Shown here: piece after piece, positions 6,440 to 42,092 of the stretch
Position numbering within the stretch: position 1 is the first letter of the stretch
Layout of the letters: every line of letters starts with the position of its first letter
Assembly: GCF_947568905.1 (NCBI RefSeq)
Contig: NC_079166.1
Coordinates: 80,972,001-81,036,000, forward strand
Source of the DNA: Ostrea edulis
Lineage: Eukaryota
DNA: 64,000 nucleotides
Direction of reading: 5' to 3'
Notes under the pieces: generated by a model
The model's database searches: none
What the model saw: only the letters and a program-made list of their open reading frames with translations
Told to the model about the DNA's origin: nothing
Program-made: the position numbers and the translations under genes

Positions 6440-7245
6440 ATGTTGATTTTGAGTTTAGAAACCTTGATGATTTTGAGATTGGAAACCTTGAAGTGATGAT
6501 GATTTAGTTTAGAAACATTGATGAATTAGTGTTTGATAACCTTGACGATTTAGAGTTTAGAGATCTTGATGGTTTAGAGTTTAGAAATCTTGATGATTTA
6601 GAGTTTAGAAACCTTGATGATATAGAGTTTGATAACCTTGATGATTTAGAGTTTAGAGATCTTGATGGTTTAGAGTTTAGAAATCTTGATGATTTAGAGT
6701 TTAGAAACCTTGATGATTCAGTGTTTGATAACCTTGATGATTTAGTGTTTGATGACCTTGATGATTTAGTGTTTGATAACCTTGATGATTTAGTGTTTGA
6801 TAACCTTGATGATTTAGTGTTTGATTACCTTGATGATTTAGTGTTTGATAACCTTGACGATTTAGTGTTTGATAACCTTGATGATTTAGTGTTTGATAAC
6901 CTTGATGATTTAGTGTTTGATAACCTTGATGATTTAGTGTTTGATAACCTTGATGATTTAGAGGTTAGAAACCTTGATGATTTAGTGTTTGATAACCTTG
7001 ACGATTTAGTGTTTGATAACCTTGACGATTTAGTGTTTGATAACTTTGATGATTTAGTGTTTGATAACCTTGATGATTTAGAGTTTAGAAACCTTGATGA
7101 TTTAGAGTTTAGATACCTTGATGATTTAGAGTTTAGAAACCTTGATGATTTAGTGTTTGATAACCTTGATGATTTAGAGTTTAGAAACCTTGATGATTTA
7201 GAGTTTAGATACCTTGATGATTTAGAGTGTAACAACCTTGGTGAC
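6440..7245. repeat. 24-bp minisatellite (ttagtgtttgataaccttgatgat)
   Basis: More than 30 tandem copies; the source of ORF 6529-7275. Confidence 0.95.
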
Positions 7246-23517: not shown

Positions 23518-25355
23518 AACACTGTGACCCCTAGGTTCCCGACAGGGACACACTCTTCGAAAATCTCAACAGACCCAGAAGGGTATTTCAAATTGAAATG
23601 CAGAAGTTTATACAAAGTGCAGATTAAAGTTTATTCACTCTAAACAAGGGCCTCTTTGGTGAGGGGGAAGACATGTATAATGAACTACACGGGAACGTAC
23701 GGTTCGGGTGAGTGATATCCAAGGGCGACTCGTTTGATTTTGTCAATCAAAGAATATCATGAATTTTAATTGACCAATTACTAATTTGTACAACAGGTTG
23801 AACAGCTGTTAAAATAGATATACATGTATCAAAAAGTGATGGCTGTTGAAATTTTTTCAAGAGTTATGTTTCTTTAAATGTGCACCATCTTTACTTTCAC
23901 AGAATCATTTCATTGCACAAATGGGTAAACGATATGATACAATGTATTTTAGTACTAAATCTAGTTTGTATTTTTAATAAATATATAAAATTATCGACGA
24001 TAAAATGCCTTTCTTTGTTGTTTTATCGGGTGATAGAAAGCATTTATCAAAATTGTATGTACATACACCGACACGAGATGATATGCACCTTTACTCGGGA
24101 GTATGAGCAACATGGGGCGGATCGAGAAATTTTTGCCGCAATCCAATGTCAATGATCCAGCTGGTGATATTGATGTTTGTGCATGGTAACGTGCATGTTT
24201 ATGTTGTAACAGTTTTACTATATTAATCTTTCATCATTACCAACAGCGGCAATCAGCGATGTGCATTGTAAGAAAATAAATGAATTCACAGAACAGGACA
24301 TCTGATACCCCCCCTCCCTGTATTTTTTTTTTTTATAATGTTCAATTTCTTATGTATTTCGGATCAAATATTCAACTTCAGAGGTTATAATTTATTTCAA
24401 TGGTATACACAAACCTCGCATATAGAAACCGTTTTAAAAATGTCATACATTGTATCATCGATCATAATAGTCCATTCCTGTGAGTCCTATTTGATCAGAA
24501 ACATTATTTTGTTGATTCTTTATTTATCAATAATTAATATTCAGTACTAATCGGCATAGATTATCGTTTAGAATGTCCCGTCAGAAGTAGAGAAACTAGT
24601 TGAGTATACTCCATCGACTTTGTGATATTTTTATTATACTACTACTTGTGTAGATTTTTATATACTTATTTATGGATATTATACATGTATATATATATAT
24701 TCCAAATAGAAAGAGTTGATATCACACAATCAAAATAATTGAATAAAAAAGGAGGGAAATATGTGGCTCCAAAATATATTCAAATCATTAACGCTTTCTG
24801 GATTTTAACATCCATCCTCAAGTGAATACAAATATTGAATACCCATTCATTATTTGATATTCGATATTTATATTCATCTGAGGATGGGTGTTAAAATCCA
24901 CAAAGCGCTAGTGATTTGAATATATTGTGGAACTGCATATTTTCCTGCTTATTTATTTAATTATAGAGAGAGAGAGAGGGGGGGGGGGACTCCTGCGTGC
25001 CATTAAAGCAATGGATACCTTAAACACCGACGCATTCCCAATGTCCAACAACACGTGACATTACCGATTATACAAATCGCCCATCAGACACCCATGTGTC
25101 TATCGTTTTTCTGCCCCATAGACAGACAACCTTTAGAAACAGTTGTTCCTAAGCTGGTGACTGATACGTACAGTTATTAAAATCTTTTCTCCGAGGGAAA
25201 AGTCATCTGGACCTCTTAGGCGGCTTATATACGAGGTTTGTTTTCCACCCGGCGGTCAGACAGACGGACAACGGATTAACGGCAGTCAGAAAACTAATCT
25301 AATAAACAAAGACACAGACAATTAAATCACAAATTTTATTGTTCATTAATTCCAT

Positions 25356-25808
25356 TTACACATTCTGCATAGAAGATTGGATACAAAGAAGCATGTTGTC
25401 AATTTCTGCTGAAACACAGCTATCAAACACCTCGTCACTTAAGCCGGTGTCGACATCAGTACCTTTGTCTTCAGGATCGATGATGATACTTTTTATGTAT
25501 CTTCTATCTGAAATGAAAATATAAATTGACAGATATATAGTCAGATATAAACAAAGAAATGTTTGTATGTGCATAGTTCATGAAGAATTTATATGTTGCA
25601 ATGGAGTTTCAAAACATTTTGCTTTTATTGACTTTTAAAACAATTATTAGCAATGCTTGTGCTATGTAAAATCAGAAAAACCTAATGCCTGAAATAGGCC
25701 GTCTATTAATTTTGTACGGTTTATAAATACATAATATGTACCTCTCTTGTTCCACCATTTGTAGGCCTCCATGATCCCCATCACGAACCAAGACGCACAG
25801 GGAAACAT
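25356..25808 (-). CDS. Putative 72-aa microprotein gene, copy A (2 coding exons)
   Basis: join(25808-25742, 25507-25356) gives MFPCASWFVMGIMEAYKWWNKRDRRYIKSIIIDPEDKGTDVDTGLSDEVFDSCVSAEIDNMLLCIQSSMQNV*. GT-AG intron, upstream UTR-exon donor at 25943, AATAAA downstream. It differs from copy B almost only at silent sites. Confidence 0.7.
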
Positions 25809-26072
25809 CTTAAATCAACCCTAAAATGTAATTATGAAGAAAAAACCCATGAAAATGGAAAAACTGCGCGTTTTGAGTAACAAGGACATTTGGAATGGTT
25901 TCTGAGATGACTGATCTGACTAATGGTGTATGGCAATACTTACAGTGGCGGAGCTGATGAACAGTCTATTTATTTATCCACAATGTCAATATCTTCACAA
26001 TGTGGAAATCTTCACACTCAAATATTCCAGATATTCTCAGGACAATGCTTTGTTCTGATGATTGTAAGTAAC

Positions 26073-26255
26073 TATATAGCTTACTTACCAGTGATTATGA
26101 CGTTATAAGTATTATGACGTCACAATGATCCCCGAAAAGGAGGAGTTTACTTCGGGTTTTTTTTTTTAAAGAACAATGTGACGTCATAATGCTTGTTACG
26201 TCATAATCACTGGTACGTCAGCCATAGCTACTACCAACATTTTGCTGGGTATATA
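26073..26255. promoter_or_regulatory. Mirrored bidirectional promoter: TATA-like - CRE - CRE - TATA-like
   Basis: TGACGTCA at 26115-26122 and 26179-26186; variant sites TGACGTTA at 26098 and TTACGTCA at 26196; TATATA at 26073 and 26250. All are placed symmetrically between the two microprotein genes. Confidence 0.5.
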
Positions 26256-26473
26256 GCTAGTGAAAACATTTTTACTCTGAAGATATTGGCATTGTGGACT
26301 ATTAATTAAACCATCTGTTGCTCATCGCCGTCACTGTAAGTACTTTTTACACACCGTTAGTCCGATCAACCATTCCAAATTCCAATGTTACTCAGATTCC
26401 ATGATGTTCTTATCTTCATGTTCCTTTATGAAATACCAACTTGCAGAACTTTATATTTTAGAGTTGATTTAAG

Positions 26474-27099
26474 ATGTTTCCCTGTGCTTCTTGGTTCGTG
26501 ATGGGGATTATGGAGGCCTACAAATGGTGGAACAAGAGAAGTAAGTATTATGTATTGATAAGCCATACAGATGGGTGCTCAATTTTTTTTTTATGAAACA
26601 AACTTCCGTGTAGTTCATCAAATACATGGCATAGTATGGATTCATCTAGTTATTAAATGCTTTCCAGCCAGCACAGCATATAAATTAATTATTTAAGTCG
26701 ACATGTACAGCATATATTTTTTATTTTTCAACTGTTTAGTACAACTATGCAACATTTTTAACTGGTGGGTGGATTTTACTTAATTGCAGAACTCTACAAA
26801 CATTATATTTAGCACTCGGTAAAAGAAATGAAATACCCCCTCCCCCCTCCCCCCTTGAGAGCTACAATTCTTTAGCTAGACTGATATCTGTAGTTTTGAT
26901 ATCTTACACTATGATAATAACTGTATCAATTTATATTTTCATTTCAGATAGAAGATACATAAAAAGTATCATCATCGATCCTGAAGACAAGGGTACTGAT
27001 GTCGACACCGGCTTAAGTGACGAGGTGTTTGATAGCTGTGTTTCAGCAGAAATTGACAACATGCTACTTTGTATCCAATCTTCTATGCAGAATGTGTAA
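26474..27099 (+). CDS. Putative 72-aa microprotein gene, copy B (2 coding exons)
   Basis: join(26474-26540, 26948-27099) gives the same protein with N at residue 23. AAG|ATG context has an in-frame upstream TGA. Donor GTAAGT at 26541, acceptor ttttcatttcag at 26947, UTR-exon donor GTAAGT at 26336, AATAAA at ~27115. Confidence 0.7.
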
Positions 27100-27556
27100 A
27101 TGGAATTAATTAACAATAAAATATGTGATTTAATTGTTTTGTGTCTTTATTTATAGGATTAGTTGTATATCCGATTTCTGACTACCGTTTTTCCATTGTC
27201 CATGGTCGAACGATTTGATGGAGAAGCAACCTCTTTAATTTTTCTCAGATATATGAACCACAAAGTAATGCTCAAGACATATTCTATGCACGTGATGCGA
27301 GAAGAAATTTCTCTTAATTTCCACAACTATAGGTTAATGGGCTTCCATAGTAAAATGTATCATAATTATGCTGTACAAGTGCATGGAATGGAAATAATAA
27401 TGGGAAATAATGGGATGATGGTTTTTATACAACACTGTGACTTTTCTCGAGAAGCCTTAATTAACTGAGCTCAGTCGAAATTAGTAGGGCACATACTGCA
27501 GGTGTTTGACGTGAATGCTGAACTTAATATATATCTGGAGTATTACAAGTGCTTAC

Positions 27557-27854
27557 CTGTAGAACAGGAGTTCTGAGAGAGAGAGAGAGAGAGAGAGGGA
27601 TCGAGAGATCCACTCCTCATAAAAACCTTTGATTTACAGTACCACGTTTTTCTGCGCACGATTAAGATATTCTGTCATCGCTGCCATTGAACTCCTTAGT
27701 TCGAACTTAGACATCGGTTGCGTCCGGGCTGATTCTATAATTTAATTGCACTAACGGCAAGGTGGTAACACAGCCTCCATCTCACCTTCCCTAGCCAAGA
27801 CAAACACCGTGGAGCGTCACCCTTGGCTAGTGAAGATGAATCCGATTTAAGTCT
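27557..27854 (-). CDS. Candidate internal exons of an unidentified gene (69 nt + 16-nt microexon)
   Basis: tttcttcatag|27854-27786|GTGAGA encodes RLKSDSSSLAKGDAPRCLSWLGK; (ct)n-cag|27572-27557|GTAAGC encodes NSCST. Strong splice signals and compatible phase. Confidence 0.28.
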
Positions 27855-28035: not shown

Positions 28036-28174
28036 GTGCAGCGGTCAGCCGGGTTCGATCGCAGGTGTCCATATCAAGTTATAGCACAGTTGGTAGAGCA
28101 CCTGACTAGAGAATTCAGGGGGCCCGGGTTCGAATCCCGGTCTGGCCTGTTGCATTTCCTCCCTTCCTGTTACA
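28036..28174 (+). mobile_element. tRNA-derived SINE-like head
   Basis: A-box tagcacagttggtagagca and B-box gggttcgaatccc; the acceptor stem does not close. Confidence 0.65.
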
Positions 28175-28725: not shown

Positions 28726-29925
28726 TAATAGAGGGCGAAGCCCTCTCACGGCCCGAAGGGCCGTGAGAGCGGAGCTCTCCCTATAGGTAACACGTATATA
28801 CATGTTTAAAAGGAAAATATAGGAAAACAATGAAAAATTAAACCATACCTATGGAACTTGAAAATTTTGGTACTAATGGCGTCGATTCGAATACTATCGC
28901 GTGGACATGTATTTCTCCATTTTGAATCTCGTCTACCCTAGTTCACGTCGTTCTGAGATGTTACAAAAATTTCTTAAAAGCATGTAAATCTTATTTTTTT
29001 AATCATATATAATCACTCCACCATTAACGCCATGTTTGTTGTTGTGGTTCAGACGCTATGTTTTTTAGGAAAATAAGATTTACATGCTTAAACGGATTTT
29101 ATGTAACATCTCAGAACGACGTGAACTAGGGTAGACGAGATTCAAAATGGAGGAATACATGTCCACGCGCTAATATTCGAATCGACGCCATTGGTACCAA
29201 ACTTTTCAAGTTCCATAGGTATGATTTAATTTTTCTATATTTTCCTTTTAAACATGTATATACGTGTTACCTATAGGGAGATCTCCACTCTCACGGCCCT
29301 TCGGGCCGTGAGAGGGCTTCGCCCTCTAATATGCTTTATGGCGTGACCGTGTTTGAGGGCGAAGCAAAAAGTATTAGCATTAGTTTGTAGATCCATAACA
29401 GGACAAAAAATATCCCGAAGGTAGCACTTAACGTTTTAGGACAGAGGTCAATCAAAGTATTCTAACTTTAGACATTTCAAGTTGATCCGCCTACTCATTG
29501 AACGCGGGAAACTATATGCAACTGATGTAAACAGTGCATTGTGACGTCATATTCAGCATCGGTGTTTAGCAAATTCATAAACATAGGATGAGACAAGTTA
29601 CAAATTTTGCGTTACTCGAGACCAGGAGTGATTTTAGGGCCTATATGATTAAGAAAATAAAATTTACATGCTTCTACGGATTTTATGCAACATCTCACAA
29701 TGACGTGAATTTGTGTATACGAGATTCAAAATGGAGAAATACATGTCCACGCGATAGTATTCGAATCGACGCCATTGGGACCAAACTTTTCAAGTTCCAT
29801 AGGTATGGTTTAATTTTTCATTATTTTCCTATATTTTCCTTTTAAACGTGTATATACGTGTTACCTATAGGGAGAGCTCCGCTCTCACGGCCCTTCGGGC
29901 CATGAGAGGGCTTCACCCTCTATTA
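28726..29925. mobile_element. Three-armed foldback/MITE with terminal GAA-loop hairpins
   Basis: A ~270-bp arm at 28726-29000 is inverted relative to two copies ending at 29328 and 29925. The termini carry agagggc-GAA-gccctct and ctctcacggccc-GAA-gggccgtgagag. Confidence 0.85.
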
Positions 29926-39631: not shown

Positions 39632-42092
39632 CTATTTCGAAATTATGACAGTCTTCTCTTTAATACTTCGTTTCAAAATACCCCGATGCGTTTTTTGCGT
39701 TGATTGGTTCTCTGATCGTTGCGTCACTGGAGGTTGTGACATATTTGACCTTGCAGTTAAAACGTCTTCCAGCTCCATAGAGTTAGGTCCTTTGACAATT
39801 GTAAATTCATACAACACCCAATAGCGACCCTTTGGGTCTTTTGTACCGGCGATTCGTAAACTGCCCCCGGCAGTGGAGGTCCGAACAGCTGCGCGCCAAA
39901 CACCGCCATTTCCCTTTTCAATTTTCCTTCCGTTAACAACTGCTTTAATAATGTCACGGGACCGAAACCGTATTATTACCCAAGATTCTTCCGGTAGTTC
40001 ACGCATCAGTGGCTCTAAAAGCTGGCAATGGTACTCGGTAGCGGAAGAATACATTGCCGGAAACGGTGAAGCGTTTTCCGTGGCGTGTCTGGTGCAGTCT
40101 ATCAGATACAGTAGCACAGGTTCGAAGTTCCCAGAGTCAGTTTTACAGAAAATTTGTAATTTGTAGAAACCCTTTTCTGGGAAACGACCTCGTATTAATA
40201 ATGCACTCCCATTGTTTTCTACTAAGAAATAATTTTCTAAGTTTTTTATCGTGGATTCAGAATAAGCGACCCGAAAAGTGACAGTAAAGTCTTTTGTTTT
40301 ATTTAACGTTAATTCTAGATCACCATCTTTTGGAGTCATAATTAAAGGCGAATCAACACCAGCATGGAATCCGAAGTCTTTGTAATCAGAGCGTGACCGC
40401 CACACTCCTGAGTGTTTTGGATATAAATAGACCTTTCGCTCCGTCTGTCTGCAACGTAATATGTACGACACAACTGCATAAAGTGTTGCGTCGTTCTTGT
40501 CGACACGCCCGAGTATTGTCAATCGAAACTTCCCGGTACTCGGAGGGCGTACTCGAATTGAGAACAGGTTGTGATCCGGGTTCTGAACCAGTGTGTACTG
40601 TTTGTGAACGTTTCCGCCGGTATCAGTTAGACGTGCAGAAACATTGCTGAGCATTCGTGACGTTCCTTTTATAAACACAGTGGCGGACATCGTCACAGAA
40701 ATCACGGCTTCTTTATGAGATACTAGATCCACGCCCCATTGGAAGGATTTTATCGTCCGTTTCACATTTTTATTAAACGTCTGCAGAGTCAGAGGTTTCT
40801 GGAGAAGCTGCCAGGCCTTACTTTCTCTTTTGTTTTTGTCCATGTACGGAAAATGTGTAGAAATCAACTGGTTAGGGTCAGTAAGAAAATAAAAGTTTTC
40901 GAATTCTCGGTTATAATGACCCTCGTCATTAACAAAACCTGCCCCCAATGTGCAGTCAATCAAACACCACTGACCGACCACGTGAACAGCGTTCCACGCG
41001 TGATTGGTTTGCTGGGTGTATTTGAATGGTTTGGATGGGTTGTATCCGTATCCTTTCAGGTATCCATACAGAGTCCTTACCGGAATGTCTGTTAACCTAC
41101 AGATTCGGAACAAAATGTACATCGTTAAAAAAAAAACCACGTGTGTATTGTGACGTTGTATCAGATGAAAGGTGAAGATAACGAACAATGATCAATCTCA
41201 TAACTCCTATAAAGAAATTAGAGAGTTGTTGAAATAGCGGTGTTGTTTGTATACCTGCAGAGTTCTGCGAAGAGTTCAGCATAACCGTAGCTAAGTGCAA
41301 CCTTAGTGTGCATTGTGAATTCCGCCGCCACGGGCTTCTTGTAGTTGTTGAGGAAAGATCGCACATCCAATCTGCAACATACAGTTGAGAATACAACCTT
41401 ATCCATTATTTTGTTTCTGGTCACCAGCTAAATAAGTTATAATCGCGGGACTCTGGAAGTCGGTCTCCTCATGTCGGCAGGGTTTTTCGGTGTCGTCTAT
41501 ACATGTATATTCAACATTCGGAAAAGTAATTTCCCTTTGCAAGTTAAAACTGGAAAGGGAATCATTAAGGGGTACCATTCGTCAGTTTATTGTTTCCCTG
41601 TGTGACCTTACTATTCAGGGTCATGTTTGGAAAATAAAAACAATATGTGTATTTTCATCCTGCATGTATTTTATAAGATGTTACACGAAAATCGAAGGTT
41701 ACACGGAAAAGGGGATGTAACTTTTATACATAGACAAGTCATGCTCGTACTGGCCCTTATATCAAGGTAATCGTCATTGTAATTTTGTCAGAGCTAAAAC
41801 GTGATCTATATTTGAGTAATACTGTAACAATGGTTGGGGGAAAAAAATGCAGATCGAGGCTCTTTTTAAGCATGCACGTGTAGAAACGTTTTTTCTGACA
41901 TTCTACAATATGTCGGCTTTCCGATATTTATGCCCCCCGAGATCGAAGATCGGGGGGGGGGGGTATATTGTATTTGTTCTGTCTGTAATTCTGTCTAATA
42001 ACTTTTGAACAGTAAGTGATAGAACATTTTTTACCCCTTGACCTTGGAGTTTGACTTACTTTTTGTAAACTTTAACCTTGTTAATTAAGTGA

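What the first reader, a model, noticed from the sequence alone, without database searches (positions are those of the whole stretch)
25313..27160. Head-to-head inverted pair of spliced 72-aa microprotein genes under apparent purifying selection
Seen: two oppositely oriented 3-exon units (UTR exon + 67-nt + 152-nt coding exons) encode MFPCASWFVMGIMEAYKWWNKR(D/N)RRYIKSIIIDPEDKGTDVDTGLSDEVFDSCVSAEIDNMLLCIQSSMQNV. The 219 coding nt differ at 5 sites; 4 are synonymous (GCT/GCG, ATT/ATC, AAG/AAA, CTA/CTT) and 1 is D/N at the exon edge. The coding introns, by contrast, differ greatly in length (~407 vs ~234 bp) and sequence. Splice sites and AATAAA are kept in both. The ORF track misses the gene because it is spliced. 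Inference: a real, probably unannotated small-protein family with an aromatic/hydrophobic N-terminus, a basic patch and an acidic C-terminus. I recognise no homolog.
Basis: partly seen in the sequence, partly recalled or inferred. Interest (0 to 1): 0.82.

Follow-up and report, generated by a model that had tools for sequence, protein, structure and literature searches.

The report
Head-to-head pair of small-protein genes
Two mirror-image copies of a tiny three-exon gene share one promoter in a bivalve genome; older copies elsewhere show that selection has kept the 72-residue protein, but its expression and function are untested.

Summary
Two divergent three-exon units encode the same 72-aa peptide. 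They differ at 5 of 219 coding bases (4 synonymous, 1 D/N in the split codon), while introns and promoter are only 72-79% alike.

It is not a transposon: each exon occurs only twice in the 895-Mb genome.

Protein-level searches found an older family:
- a gene on C1 with the same first exon and three 123-nt phase-1 module exons;
- two decayed copies on C6;
- one foreign homologue in a marine-biofilm metagenome.

Window versus C1/C6 copies: synonymous sites are saturated (pS about 0.9-1.0), pN is about 0.26, and differences pile up at third codon positions. The foreign copy gives pN/pS 0.15-0.23. So the frame has been under purifying selection.

An exact double CRE-like box occurs four times in the genome, always upstream of family genes.

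No RNA run was available, and no Pfam, PDB or Atlas relative turned up. The only protein-database hits were unspliced genomic ORF calls.

My reading is a real, lineage-restricted, probably CRE-driven small-protein gene pair. The product is most likely a secretory peptide precursor, or else a membrane-anchored microprotein. Function is inferred, not shown.

The parts
25266..27201 (.). Whole inverted duplication: two arms of about 0.9-1.05 kb, one gene each, from the shared centre to just past the poly(A) signal.
   Evidence: Inverted repeats I1, I3, I6, I22 and I25; pairwise alignment A1.
26075..26226 (.). Shared divergent promoter core: 56-nt inverted arms around a 40-nt spacer.
   Evidence: I6, 86% complementary.
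26177..26208 (+). Double CRE-like box of the plus gene (TGTGACGTCATAAT, 7 nt, ACGTCATAATC).
   Evidence: The exact pattern occurs 4 times in 895 Mb, all upstream of family genes, and 0 times in the reversed control. It is 83-86% conserved over 35 nt with the C1 paralogue.
26093..26124 (-). Double CRE-like box of the minus gene.
26250..26335 (+). Plus gene: TATATAG (26250-26256) and the predicted non-coding first exon, ending at donor GTAAGT (26336). The transcription start is not mapped.
   Evidence: Sequence reading; no ATG inside.
26462..26540 (+). Plus gene: second exon, with 12 nt of 5' UTR (in-frame TGA) followed by a 67-nt coding part from ATG 26474; phase-1 donor GTAAGT.
26948..27140 (+). 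Plus gene: last exon, with 152 coding nt, stop at 27097-27099 and AATAAA at 27115-27120. The 3' end is approximate.
25944..26078 (-). Minus gene: TATATAG (26078-26072) and the predicted non-coding first exon, ending at donor GTAAGT (25943). The transcription start is not mapped.
25742..25820 (-). Minus gene: second exon, ATG 25808-25806, 67-nt coding part, donor GTACAT.
25315..25507 (-). Minus gene: last exon, with 152 coding nt, stop at 25358-25356 and AATAAA at 25340-25335. The 3' end is approximate.

Best explanation
These are two real protein-coding genes, inverted duplicates of one small three-exon gene. They are transcribed away from each other from a shared promoter of about 200 bp, and each arm carries a TATA box and a double CRE-like box. 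They belong to a small lineage-restricted family. Its other members in this genome are one gene on C1, with the same first coding exon followed by three copies of the module exon, and two decayed copies on C6.

Shown here:
- the reading frame, intron phase and stop position have been kept by purifying selection since a duplication old enough to saturate synonymous sites;
- the promoter box has been kept too.

Inferred:
- bZIP factors of the CREB/ATF type drive both genes;
- the near-identity of the two coding regions reflects selection, probably helped by gene conversion between the arms.

Product: 72 aa with three parts.
- An aromatic, hydrophobic N-terminus (residues 1-13, followed by KWWN).
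- A basic patch with KR and RR pairs.
- A conserved acidic module whose last 24 residues form an amphipathic helix.

The mechanism I commit to, at about 40% given that the genes are real: the N-terminus takes the protein into the secretory pathway and the basic pairs are convertase sites. The acidic module would then be released as a peptide. In the C1 paralogue three such modules lie between G-RKKR sites, which would give 36-residue amidated peptides.

The next most likely reading, at about 30%, is an uncleaved membrane-anchored microprotein.
For: Gene model:
- Both copies have every signal and no upstream ATG. The translations are identical.
- Each exon occurs only twice in the genome at DNA level.

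Family:
- Seven strong module matches on C3, C1 and C6.
- The C1 gene has the same phase-1 first exon and 123-nt phase 1-1 module exons with GTGAGT donors.

Selection:
- Window versus C1/C6: pS 0.83-1.0, pN 0.24-0.29.
- Differences by codon position 10/11/29, chi-square p about 0.001.
- Foreign homologue L029 versus C1/C6: pN/pS 0.15-0.23, third-position excess p 5e-5 to 0.01.
- L029 groups with the C6 copies in the tree, and the window pair sits on a long separate branch.

Promoter:
- 35-nt double box 83-86% identical between the window and C1.
- The exact box is found only 4 times in 895 Mb, all upstream of family genes.

Pair:
- Coding 95.5-98.7% identical against 72-79% for non-coding.

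Product:
- AlphaFold model pLDDT 83, helix at residues 24-47 of the module.
- RKKR or KR/RR sits before every intact module, and Gly precedes RKKR in the later modules.
Against: - No RNA evidence: none of the four runs holding the locus is on record as RNA, and their contigs are unspliced.
- The spliced product is absent from the 5.8-billion and 1.84-billion protein sets. Only unspliced ORF calls on genomic contigs were found.
- The C6 copies are decayed: frameshifted module, lost donor, pN/pS 1.5 between them.
- In the window pair, synonymous divergence (0.11) is lower than intron divergence. Gene conversion may therefore contribute to the 4:1 ratio.
- Against the precursor reading: the hydrophobic stretch is short and only moderately hydrophobic, with residue-specific conservation that is unusual for a signal peptide.
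- The window genes lack both RKKR and the Gly.
- The module is long and acidic.
Confidence: 0.68

Rival explanations
1. The genes are real, but the product is not cleaved. The aromatic N-terminus (possibly with Cys4 lipidated) and the basic patch hold it on the cytosolic face of a membrane. The acidic module and its amphipathic helix then bind a partner there.
For: - The exon-1 peptide keeps specific residues (13 of 22 identical) at synonymous saturation. Its pN of 0.245 matches the module's. Signal peptides usually keep only hydrophobicity.
- Positive charges follow the hydrophobic stretch.
- Hydropathy is moderate.
- The conserved part is an acidic coil plus helix with no conserved cysteines.
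Against: - The uncharged stretch is only 12-13 residues, too short for a normal membrane span.
- RKKR with a preceding Gly recurs between the C1 modules. This reading does not need that pattern, although exon duplication could copy it.
Confidence: 0.3
2. The pair is not functional today. It would be a young or gene-converted inverted duplicate of a dying gene, and the open frames are leftovers.
For: - No RNA holder and no spliced protein in any collection.
- Two other family copies (C6) are clearly decayed.
- Synonymous divergence between the arms is lower than intron divergence, as conversion would produce.
Against: - The window lineage has kept its ORF, intron phase, both splice-site sets, start context, stop position, poly(A) signal and promoter box across a divergence that saturated synonymous sites.
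- Both arms are intact, though non-coding sequence has drifted to 72-79% identity with many indels.
Confidence: 0.15
3. The exons belong to a larger transcription unit, for example a cassette or alternative terminal exon of another gene, rather than to a free-standing 72-aa gene.
For: - In the foreign contig L029, a TspO/MBR exon (Pfam E 4.7e-13) opens about 25 nt after the module's stop, with a phase-1 acceptor that fits the family's phase-1 donors.
- The C1 gene strings module exons together.
Against: - No TspO-like sequence lies within 10 kb of any family copy or in the 64-kb window. TspO matches in this genome lie elsewhere.
- Both window copies have their own TATA box, UTR exon, stop and AATAAA.
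Confidence: 0.07
4. The palindrome is a foldback transposon or a source of hairpin RNA, and the open frames are incidental.
For: Long inverted arms. Sub-threshold microRNA-like matches to the central hairpin. Looser versions of the double box sit in dispersed repeats.
Against: - Only two copies of each exon in 895 Mb.
- The C1 paralogue is not palindromic, yet keeps the frame and the promoter box.
- The third-position bias needs a coding constraint.
- No Rfam family reaches its threshold at the locus.
Confidence: 0.03

Closest known systems
Multi-copy neuropeptide or prohormone precursors (peptides set between Gly plus dibasic or furin-type sites); compared from general knowledge
   Same: Small gene. 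Hydrophobic N-terminus. A basic pair or RKKR immediately before each conserved module. Gly before RKKR between the C1 modules. Three modules in series in C1. A CRE-containing promoter.
   Different: No recognised signal-peptide cleavage motif. The window genes have one module and no Gly-RKKR. The module is long (37-47 aa) and strongly acidic. No Pfam family matches, ELH and CRF included. No peptide or RNA data.
Head-to-head inverted gene duplicates with a shared promoter that are homogenised by gene conversion (for example Drosophila Hsp70Aa/Ab); from general knowledge
   Same: Two divergent copies from a short shared control region. Coding parts are far more alike than the flanks.
   Different: The genes here are spliced and tiny. 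Conversion is only suggested (P about 0.05), not shown. Inducibility is untested.
Taxonomically restricted small-ORF or microprotein genes
   Same: 72 aa, no named homologue, missed by ORF scans, apparently absent from protein collections.
   Different: This one has deep paralogues, a cross-species homologue, clear purifying selection and a conserved promoter element. That is more support than most candidate small ORFs have.
Mussel antimicrobial peptide precursors (signal, then cationic peptide, then anionic C-terminal extension); from general knowledge
   Same: Same order of parts: hydrophobic, then cationic and Trp-rich, then anionic.
   Different: No cysteine array. Here the anionic part is the conserved one, whereas in that family it is the accessory part.

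Membership tests
Prohormone / neuropeptide precursor | Cleavable N-terminal signal peptide | tested here: inconclusive
   There are 12-13 uncharged residues right after Met1 and a Gly helix-breaker. The maximum 11-residue hydropathy is only 1.5-1.85. No predictor was available, and the joined peptide was not submitted anywhere, by rule.
Prohormone / neuropeptide precursor | Dibasic or furin-type sites flanking the conserved peptide | tested here: met
   RKKR precedes the C1 modules and one of the two C6 modules (the other has SKKK); a KR-rich run does so in L029; KR and RR do so in the window genes.
Prohormone / neuropeptide precursor | Gly amidation donor before the basic site; several peptide copies | tested here: inconclusive
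   Met in the C1 gene (two TG-RKKR junctions, three modules). Not met in the window genes (single module, no Gly).
Prohormone / neuropeptide precursor | Processed peptide detected; neuroendocrine expression | not testable with these tools
   No RNA run holds the locus. No proteomics tool was available.
Named protein families (Pfam, including ELH, CRF, PKI, retropepsin, Bcl-2/BH3) | Profile match above threshold | tested here: not met
   No Pfam family at E up to 1 for three modules. Best PDB profile hit is E 0.024 on a 23-residue helix. Atlas gave no usable hit.
BH3-only proteins | Amphipathic helix with Leu four residues before a small residue followed by Asp | tested here: not met
   LSDE(V/Q) resembles the core, but the residue four before Ser is Asp, and that stretch is modelled as coil: the helix starts at module residue 24.
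Transposon / foldback element | Many dispersed copies | tested here: not met
   Each exon occurs only twice at DNA level in 895 Mb. The paralogues share only exons and the promoter box.
TspO/MBR | Pfam PF03073 match in or beside the gene | tested here: not met
   Seen only beside the foreign homologue L029. None lies near the copies in this genome.
CRE-driven (CREB/ATF target) promoter | Palindromic TGACGTCA close to the start site | tested here: met
   One full CRE plus one variant box per arm, 21 nt apart, conserved in the C1 paralogue. Factor binding and cAMP response were not tested.

The most novel reading that the evidence does not exclude
A bivalve-restricted, CRE-driven family of peptide precursors releases a new class of acidic, helix-ended peptides of about 36-47 residues. 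These would be amidated in the three-module C1 paralogue. The window pair would be a duplicated single-module version, kept identical by selection and gene conversion.
Probability: 0.25. Interest if true: 0.65.

Novelty: new member of a known kind. Interest (0 to 1): 0.42.

Why it matters
This is a candidate small ORF with unusually good comparative support. It has deep paralogues, a homologue from another organism, a coding-type substitution pattern and a family-specific promoter box. It gives bivalve annotators at least three probably missing genes. It also gives experimenters a short list of direct tests: two splice junctions, a few tryptic or processed peptides, and a CRE reporter. If the precursor reading holds, it adds a new peptide family to molluscan signalling. 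If the anchor reading holds, it adds a new membrane microprotein. Either way it remains one lineage-restricted family of unknown function among many in bivalve genomes.

Tried and rejected
- Protein collections: the 72-aa hit P0001 looked at first like the spliced product. It is an unspliced ORF that reads through the end of the intron on genomic contigs. P0002 is the same kind of call in another organism.
- P0003 (7526 aa) and P0004 (2382 aa) score only by summing many weak repeats of a 12-15 residue motif. I rejected both as relatives.
- No further homologues came from a second word search, two scans of JGI metagenomes or a viral scan.
- A full-text search for short peptide motifs found nothing relevant.
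- Motif ideas considered by reading and dropped: retropepsin DTG, EF-hand loop, BH3, PKI pseudosubstrate (TGR..RN.I in one decayed copy), SUMO-interaction motif and nuclear export signal. None is conserved across members or backed by a profile.
- I did not run a fold search. The model is a coil plus one helix, so any match would be meaningless.
- TspO link: nothing of the kind lies near the copies in this genome.
- All searches were exon by exon, by reference. dN/dS was summed exon by exon with the split codon left out.
Full report
WHAT IS THERE

The region 25266-27201 is a diverged palindrome. Its best-kept blocks are 226-nt arms (25318-25543 / 26912-27137, 96%) and 119-nt arms (25713-25831 / 26451-26569, 92%). 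A 56-nt inverted repeat sits at the centre.

- The two 66-nt in-frame pieces of coding exon 1 translate to the same 22 residues.
- The two 147-nt pieces of exon 2 translate to the same 49 residues plus stop.
- The split codon 23 reads AAT in one copy and GAT in the other.
- The coding parts differ at 3 + 2 bases. Four differences are synonymous and none is non-synonymous in whole codons.

Both copies carry every gene signal:
- a TATATAG box;
- a non-coding first exon ending in GTAAGT;
- acceptors with pyrimidine tracts;
- an in-frame TGA nine bases before an ATG that has A at -3;
- no other ATG in the predicted leader;
- AATAAA 15 nt after the stop.

Contigs from other runs cross the centre of symmetry, so the arrangement is not an assembly artefact.

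HOW THE TWO ARMS COMPARE

Coding exons are 95.5% and 98.7% identical. The promoter with UTR exon, intron 1, intron 2 and the downstream flank are 79%, 77%, 72% and 68% identical in aligned columns, with many indels.

Five differences in 219 bases, against a background of about 22%, gives P = 2e-17.

The 4:1 ratio is weaker evidence. With 18% of sites synonymous, four or more synonymous changes out of five has P of about 0.005 by my arithmetic. That rises to about 0.03 if transitions raise the synonymous share.

Synonymous divergence (0.11) is also lower than intron divergence (P about 0.05). The immediate intron flanks of exon 2 are identical. Gene conversion between the arms probably helps keep the exons alike. 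The pair alone cannot separate selection from conversion.

NOT A REPEAT, BUT A SMALL OLD FAMILY

Each exon occurs only twice in the 895-Mb assembly at DNA level. Protein-level and profile searches of the same genome find five more good module exons.

C1, at 33.3997-33.4020 Mb:
- There is a first coding exon of 70 nt (MVFPCFSW..., phase-1 donor GTGAGT).
- Three module exons follow about 1 kb apart.
- The first two are exactly 123 nt, phase 1 to phase 1, with GTGAGT donors. The third ends in a stop.
- Read in series, they would give three 41-residue modules, each preceded by RKKR. The second and third are preceded by TG-RKKR.

C6, at 72.045 and 71.201 Mb:
- Each has an open terminal module.
- At 72.046 Mb the upstream exon 1 has lost its start and its GT donor, and an upstream module is frameshifted.
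- The two C6 modules differ with pN/pS 1.5.
- I read both as relics.

SELECTION

Window versus C1/C6 modules:
- pS is 0.83-1.0, which is saturated. pN is 0.24-0.29. Exon 1 behaves the same way (pS 0.86, pN 0.245).
- Differences by codon position are 10/11/29, 10/9/28, 13/11/29 and 12/16/32, with chi-square p of 0.0007-0.004; a fifth comparison gives 14/15/31, p 0.011.
- Intron phase and stop position are conserved.

An exhaustive profile search of 1.84 billion representative proteins found one more true relative, P0002. It is an unspliced ORF call on an 843-bp scaffold (L029) from a marine-biofilm metagenome. The sample appears in PMC6355793.
- L029's module exon has the same acceptor phase and the same stop position.
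- It is 74% identical in DNA to the C6 copy across the exon, and up to 76 nt of the preceding intron align at lower identity with the other C6 copy.
- Against C1/C6 it gives pN/pS of 0.15-0.23, with a third-position excess (p from 5e-5 to 0.01).
- In a maximum-likelihood tree it groups with the C6 copies (96/94). The window pair sits on a long branch of its own.

So the window-type gene has kept an open, spliceable frame over a long period. That is the strongest argument that it is a working gene.

PROMOTER

The centre of the palindrome holds, on each arm, a full CRE (TGACGTCA) and a variant box 21 nt further on.
- The same 35-nt double box is 83-86% identical about 1.3 kb upstream of the C1 start codon. 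A GTAAGT-ended leader exon follows it, with shared short blocks.
- The exact pattern occurs four times in the genome: on the two window arms and twice on C1. The reversed control gives no hits.
- The second C1 site is a tandem duplicate of the promoter plus leader exon.
- With three mismatches allowed there are 62 sites, many inside dispersed repeats. None has family exons nearby.
- I infer, but have not shown, that a CREB/ATF-type factor drives the family.

THE PROTEIN

Exon 1 gives a short uncharged, aromatic stretch and then E..KWWN. Thirteen of 22 residues are shared with C1.

Next comes a basic patch: KR-x-RR in the window genes, RKKR in most of the others.

The module has 19 invariant positions: P.D.GTDVD.GLSD..FD..VS.EI, plus a Lys and an Ile nearer its start. 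An AlphaFold model built with the six-row alignment has pLDDT 83. Residues 1-23 are coil and residues 24-47 form one helix.

No Pfam family matches. There is no significant PDB relative and no Atlas hit. Nothing turned up in viral or JGI metagenome contigs. No Rfam family reaches its threshold at the locus.

MECHANISM AND RIVALS

I put the reading that these are real, selected genes at about 0.68.

On function I commit to a secretory peptide precursor, at about 40% given real genes. The grounds are:
- an N-terminal hydrophobic stretch;
- basic pairs directly before every intact module;
- Gly before RKKR between modules;
- three modules in one paralogue;
- a CRE promoter.

The main rival, at about 30%, is an uncleaved membrane-anchored microprotein. 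What favours it is that the N-terminus is conserved residue by residue and is only moderately hydrophobic. The window genes also lack both RKKR and the Gly.

Lesser rivals:
- a non-functional relic kept alike by conversion (0.15);
- part of a larger transcription unit (0.07);
- a foldback element or hairpin-RNA source (0.03).

WHAT WEIGHS AGAINST

There is no RNA evidence at all.
- No spliced product of this family is present in the protein collections. The only hits are unspliced ORF calls.
- This may reflect what those collections hold, but it is a real caution.

ORGANISM

I did not verify the organism. The assembly has about ten chromosome-sized pieces of 90-112 Mb. Earlier notes of this scan call it a flat oyster.

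LEFT OUT BY RULE

The joined 72-aa peptide was never typed, searched or folded. All work was exon by exon, by reference.

Noticed in passing
L029:409-640 (marine-biofilm scaffold): About 25 nt after the module exon's stop, a TspO/MBR exon opens (Pfam E 4.7e-13) with a phase-1 acceptor, the same phase as the family's donors. In another frame the intervening bases read VFPCYS, like the start of family exon 1 (VFPCFS). Nothing comparable lies near the copies in this genome.
   Followed up: partly
G000 C1:33396169-33396200 and 33398347-33398378 (L034, L035): The promoter box, the leader exon and about 900 bp of intron 1 of the C1 paralogue are tandemly duplicated (88% identity). That gene may have two alternative promoters.
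   Followed up: partly
genome-wide, e.g. C4:19928764, C9:12158574, C8:67225266: Two dispersed repeat families each carry a pair of ACGTCAYAAT boxes at the same 21-nt spacing as the family promoter (62 sites at up to 3 mismatches, 0 in the reversed control). This may be a shared factor-binding layout, or the source of the promoter.
   Followed up: no
window 26484: One low-depth contig (run X4, depth 3.5) reads T for G, which would change the conserved Cys4 of the plus copy to Phe. It may be an error.
   Followed up: no
window 6589-7197: A tandem repeat that reads as LDDLVFDN-type acidic units in one frame; it gave weak chance matches to the module.
   Followed up: no
window 24735-24964 and 28726-29331: Two hairpin-shaped inverted repeats (107-nt arms at 85%; nested 182-nt and 102-nt arms at 91-96%) flank the gene pair and look like miniature transposons. 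GA-rich microsatellites lie at 24965-24990 and 27571-27608.
   Followed up: no
window 28081-28141: A tRNA-like match (Rfam tRNA, 36.7 bits, above the family threshold) lies inside a longer open frame. It is probably a tRNA-derived SINE.
   Followed up: no
window 39632-41188 (-): An uninterrupted 518-aa open frame, by far the longest in this part of the window. It is probably a large exon of the neighbouring gene. I did not identify it.
   Followed up: no
P0003 (7526 aa, from the representative library): A giant protein with about 29 repeats of 217 residues. Each repeat holds a KGK.DVDTALSKPEFD motif that resembles the module core. The per-repeat scores are too weak to claim kinship.
   Followed up: partly
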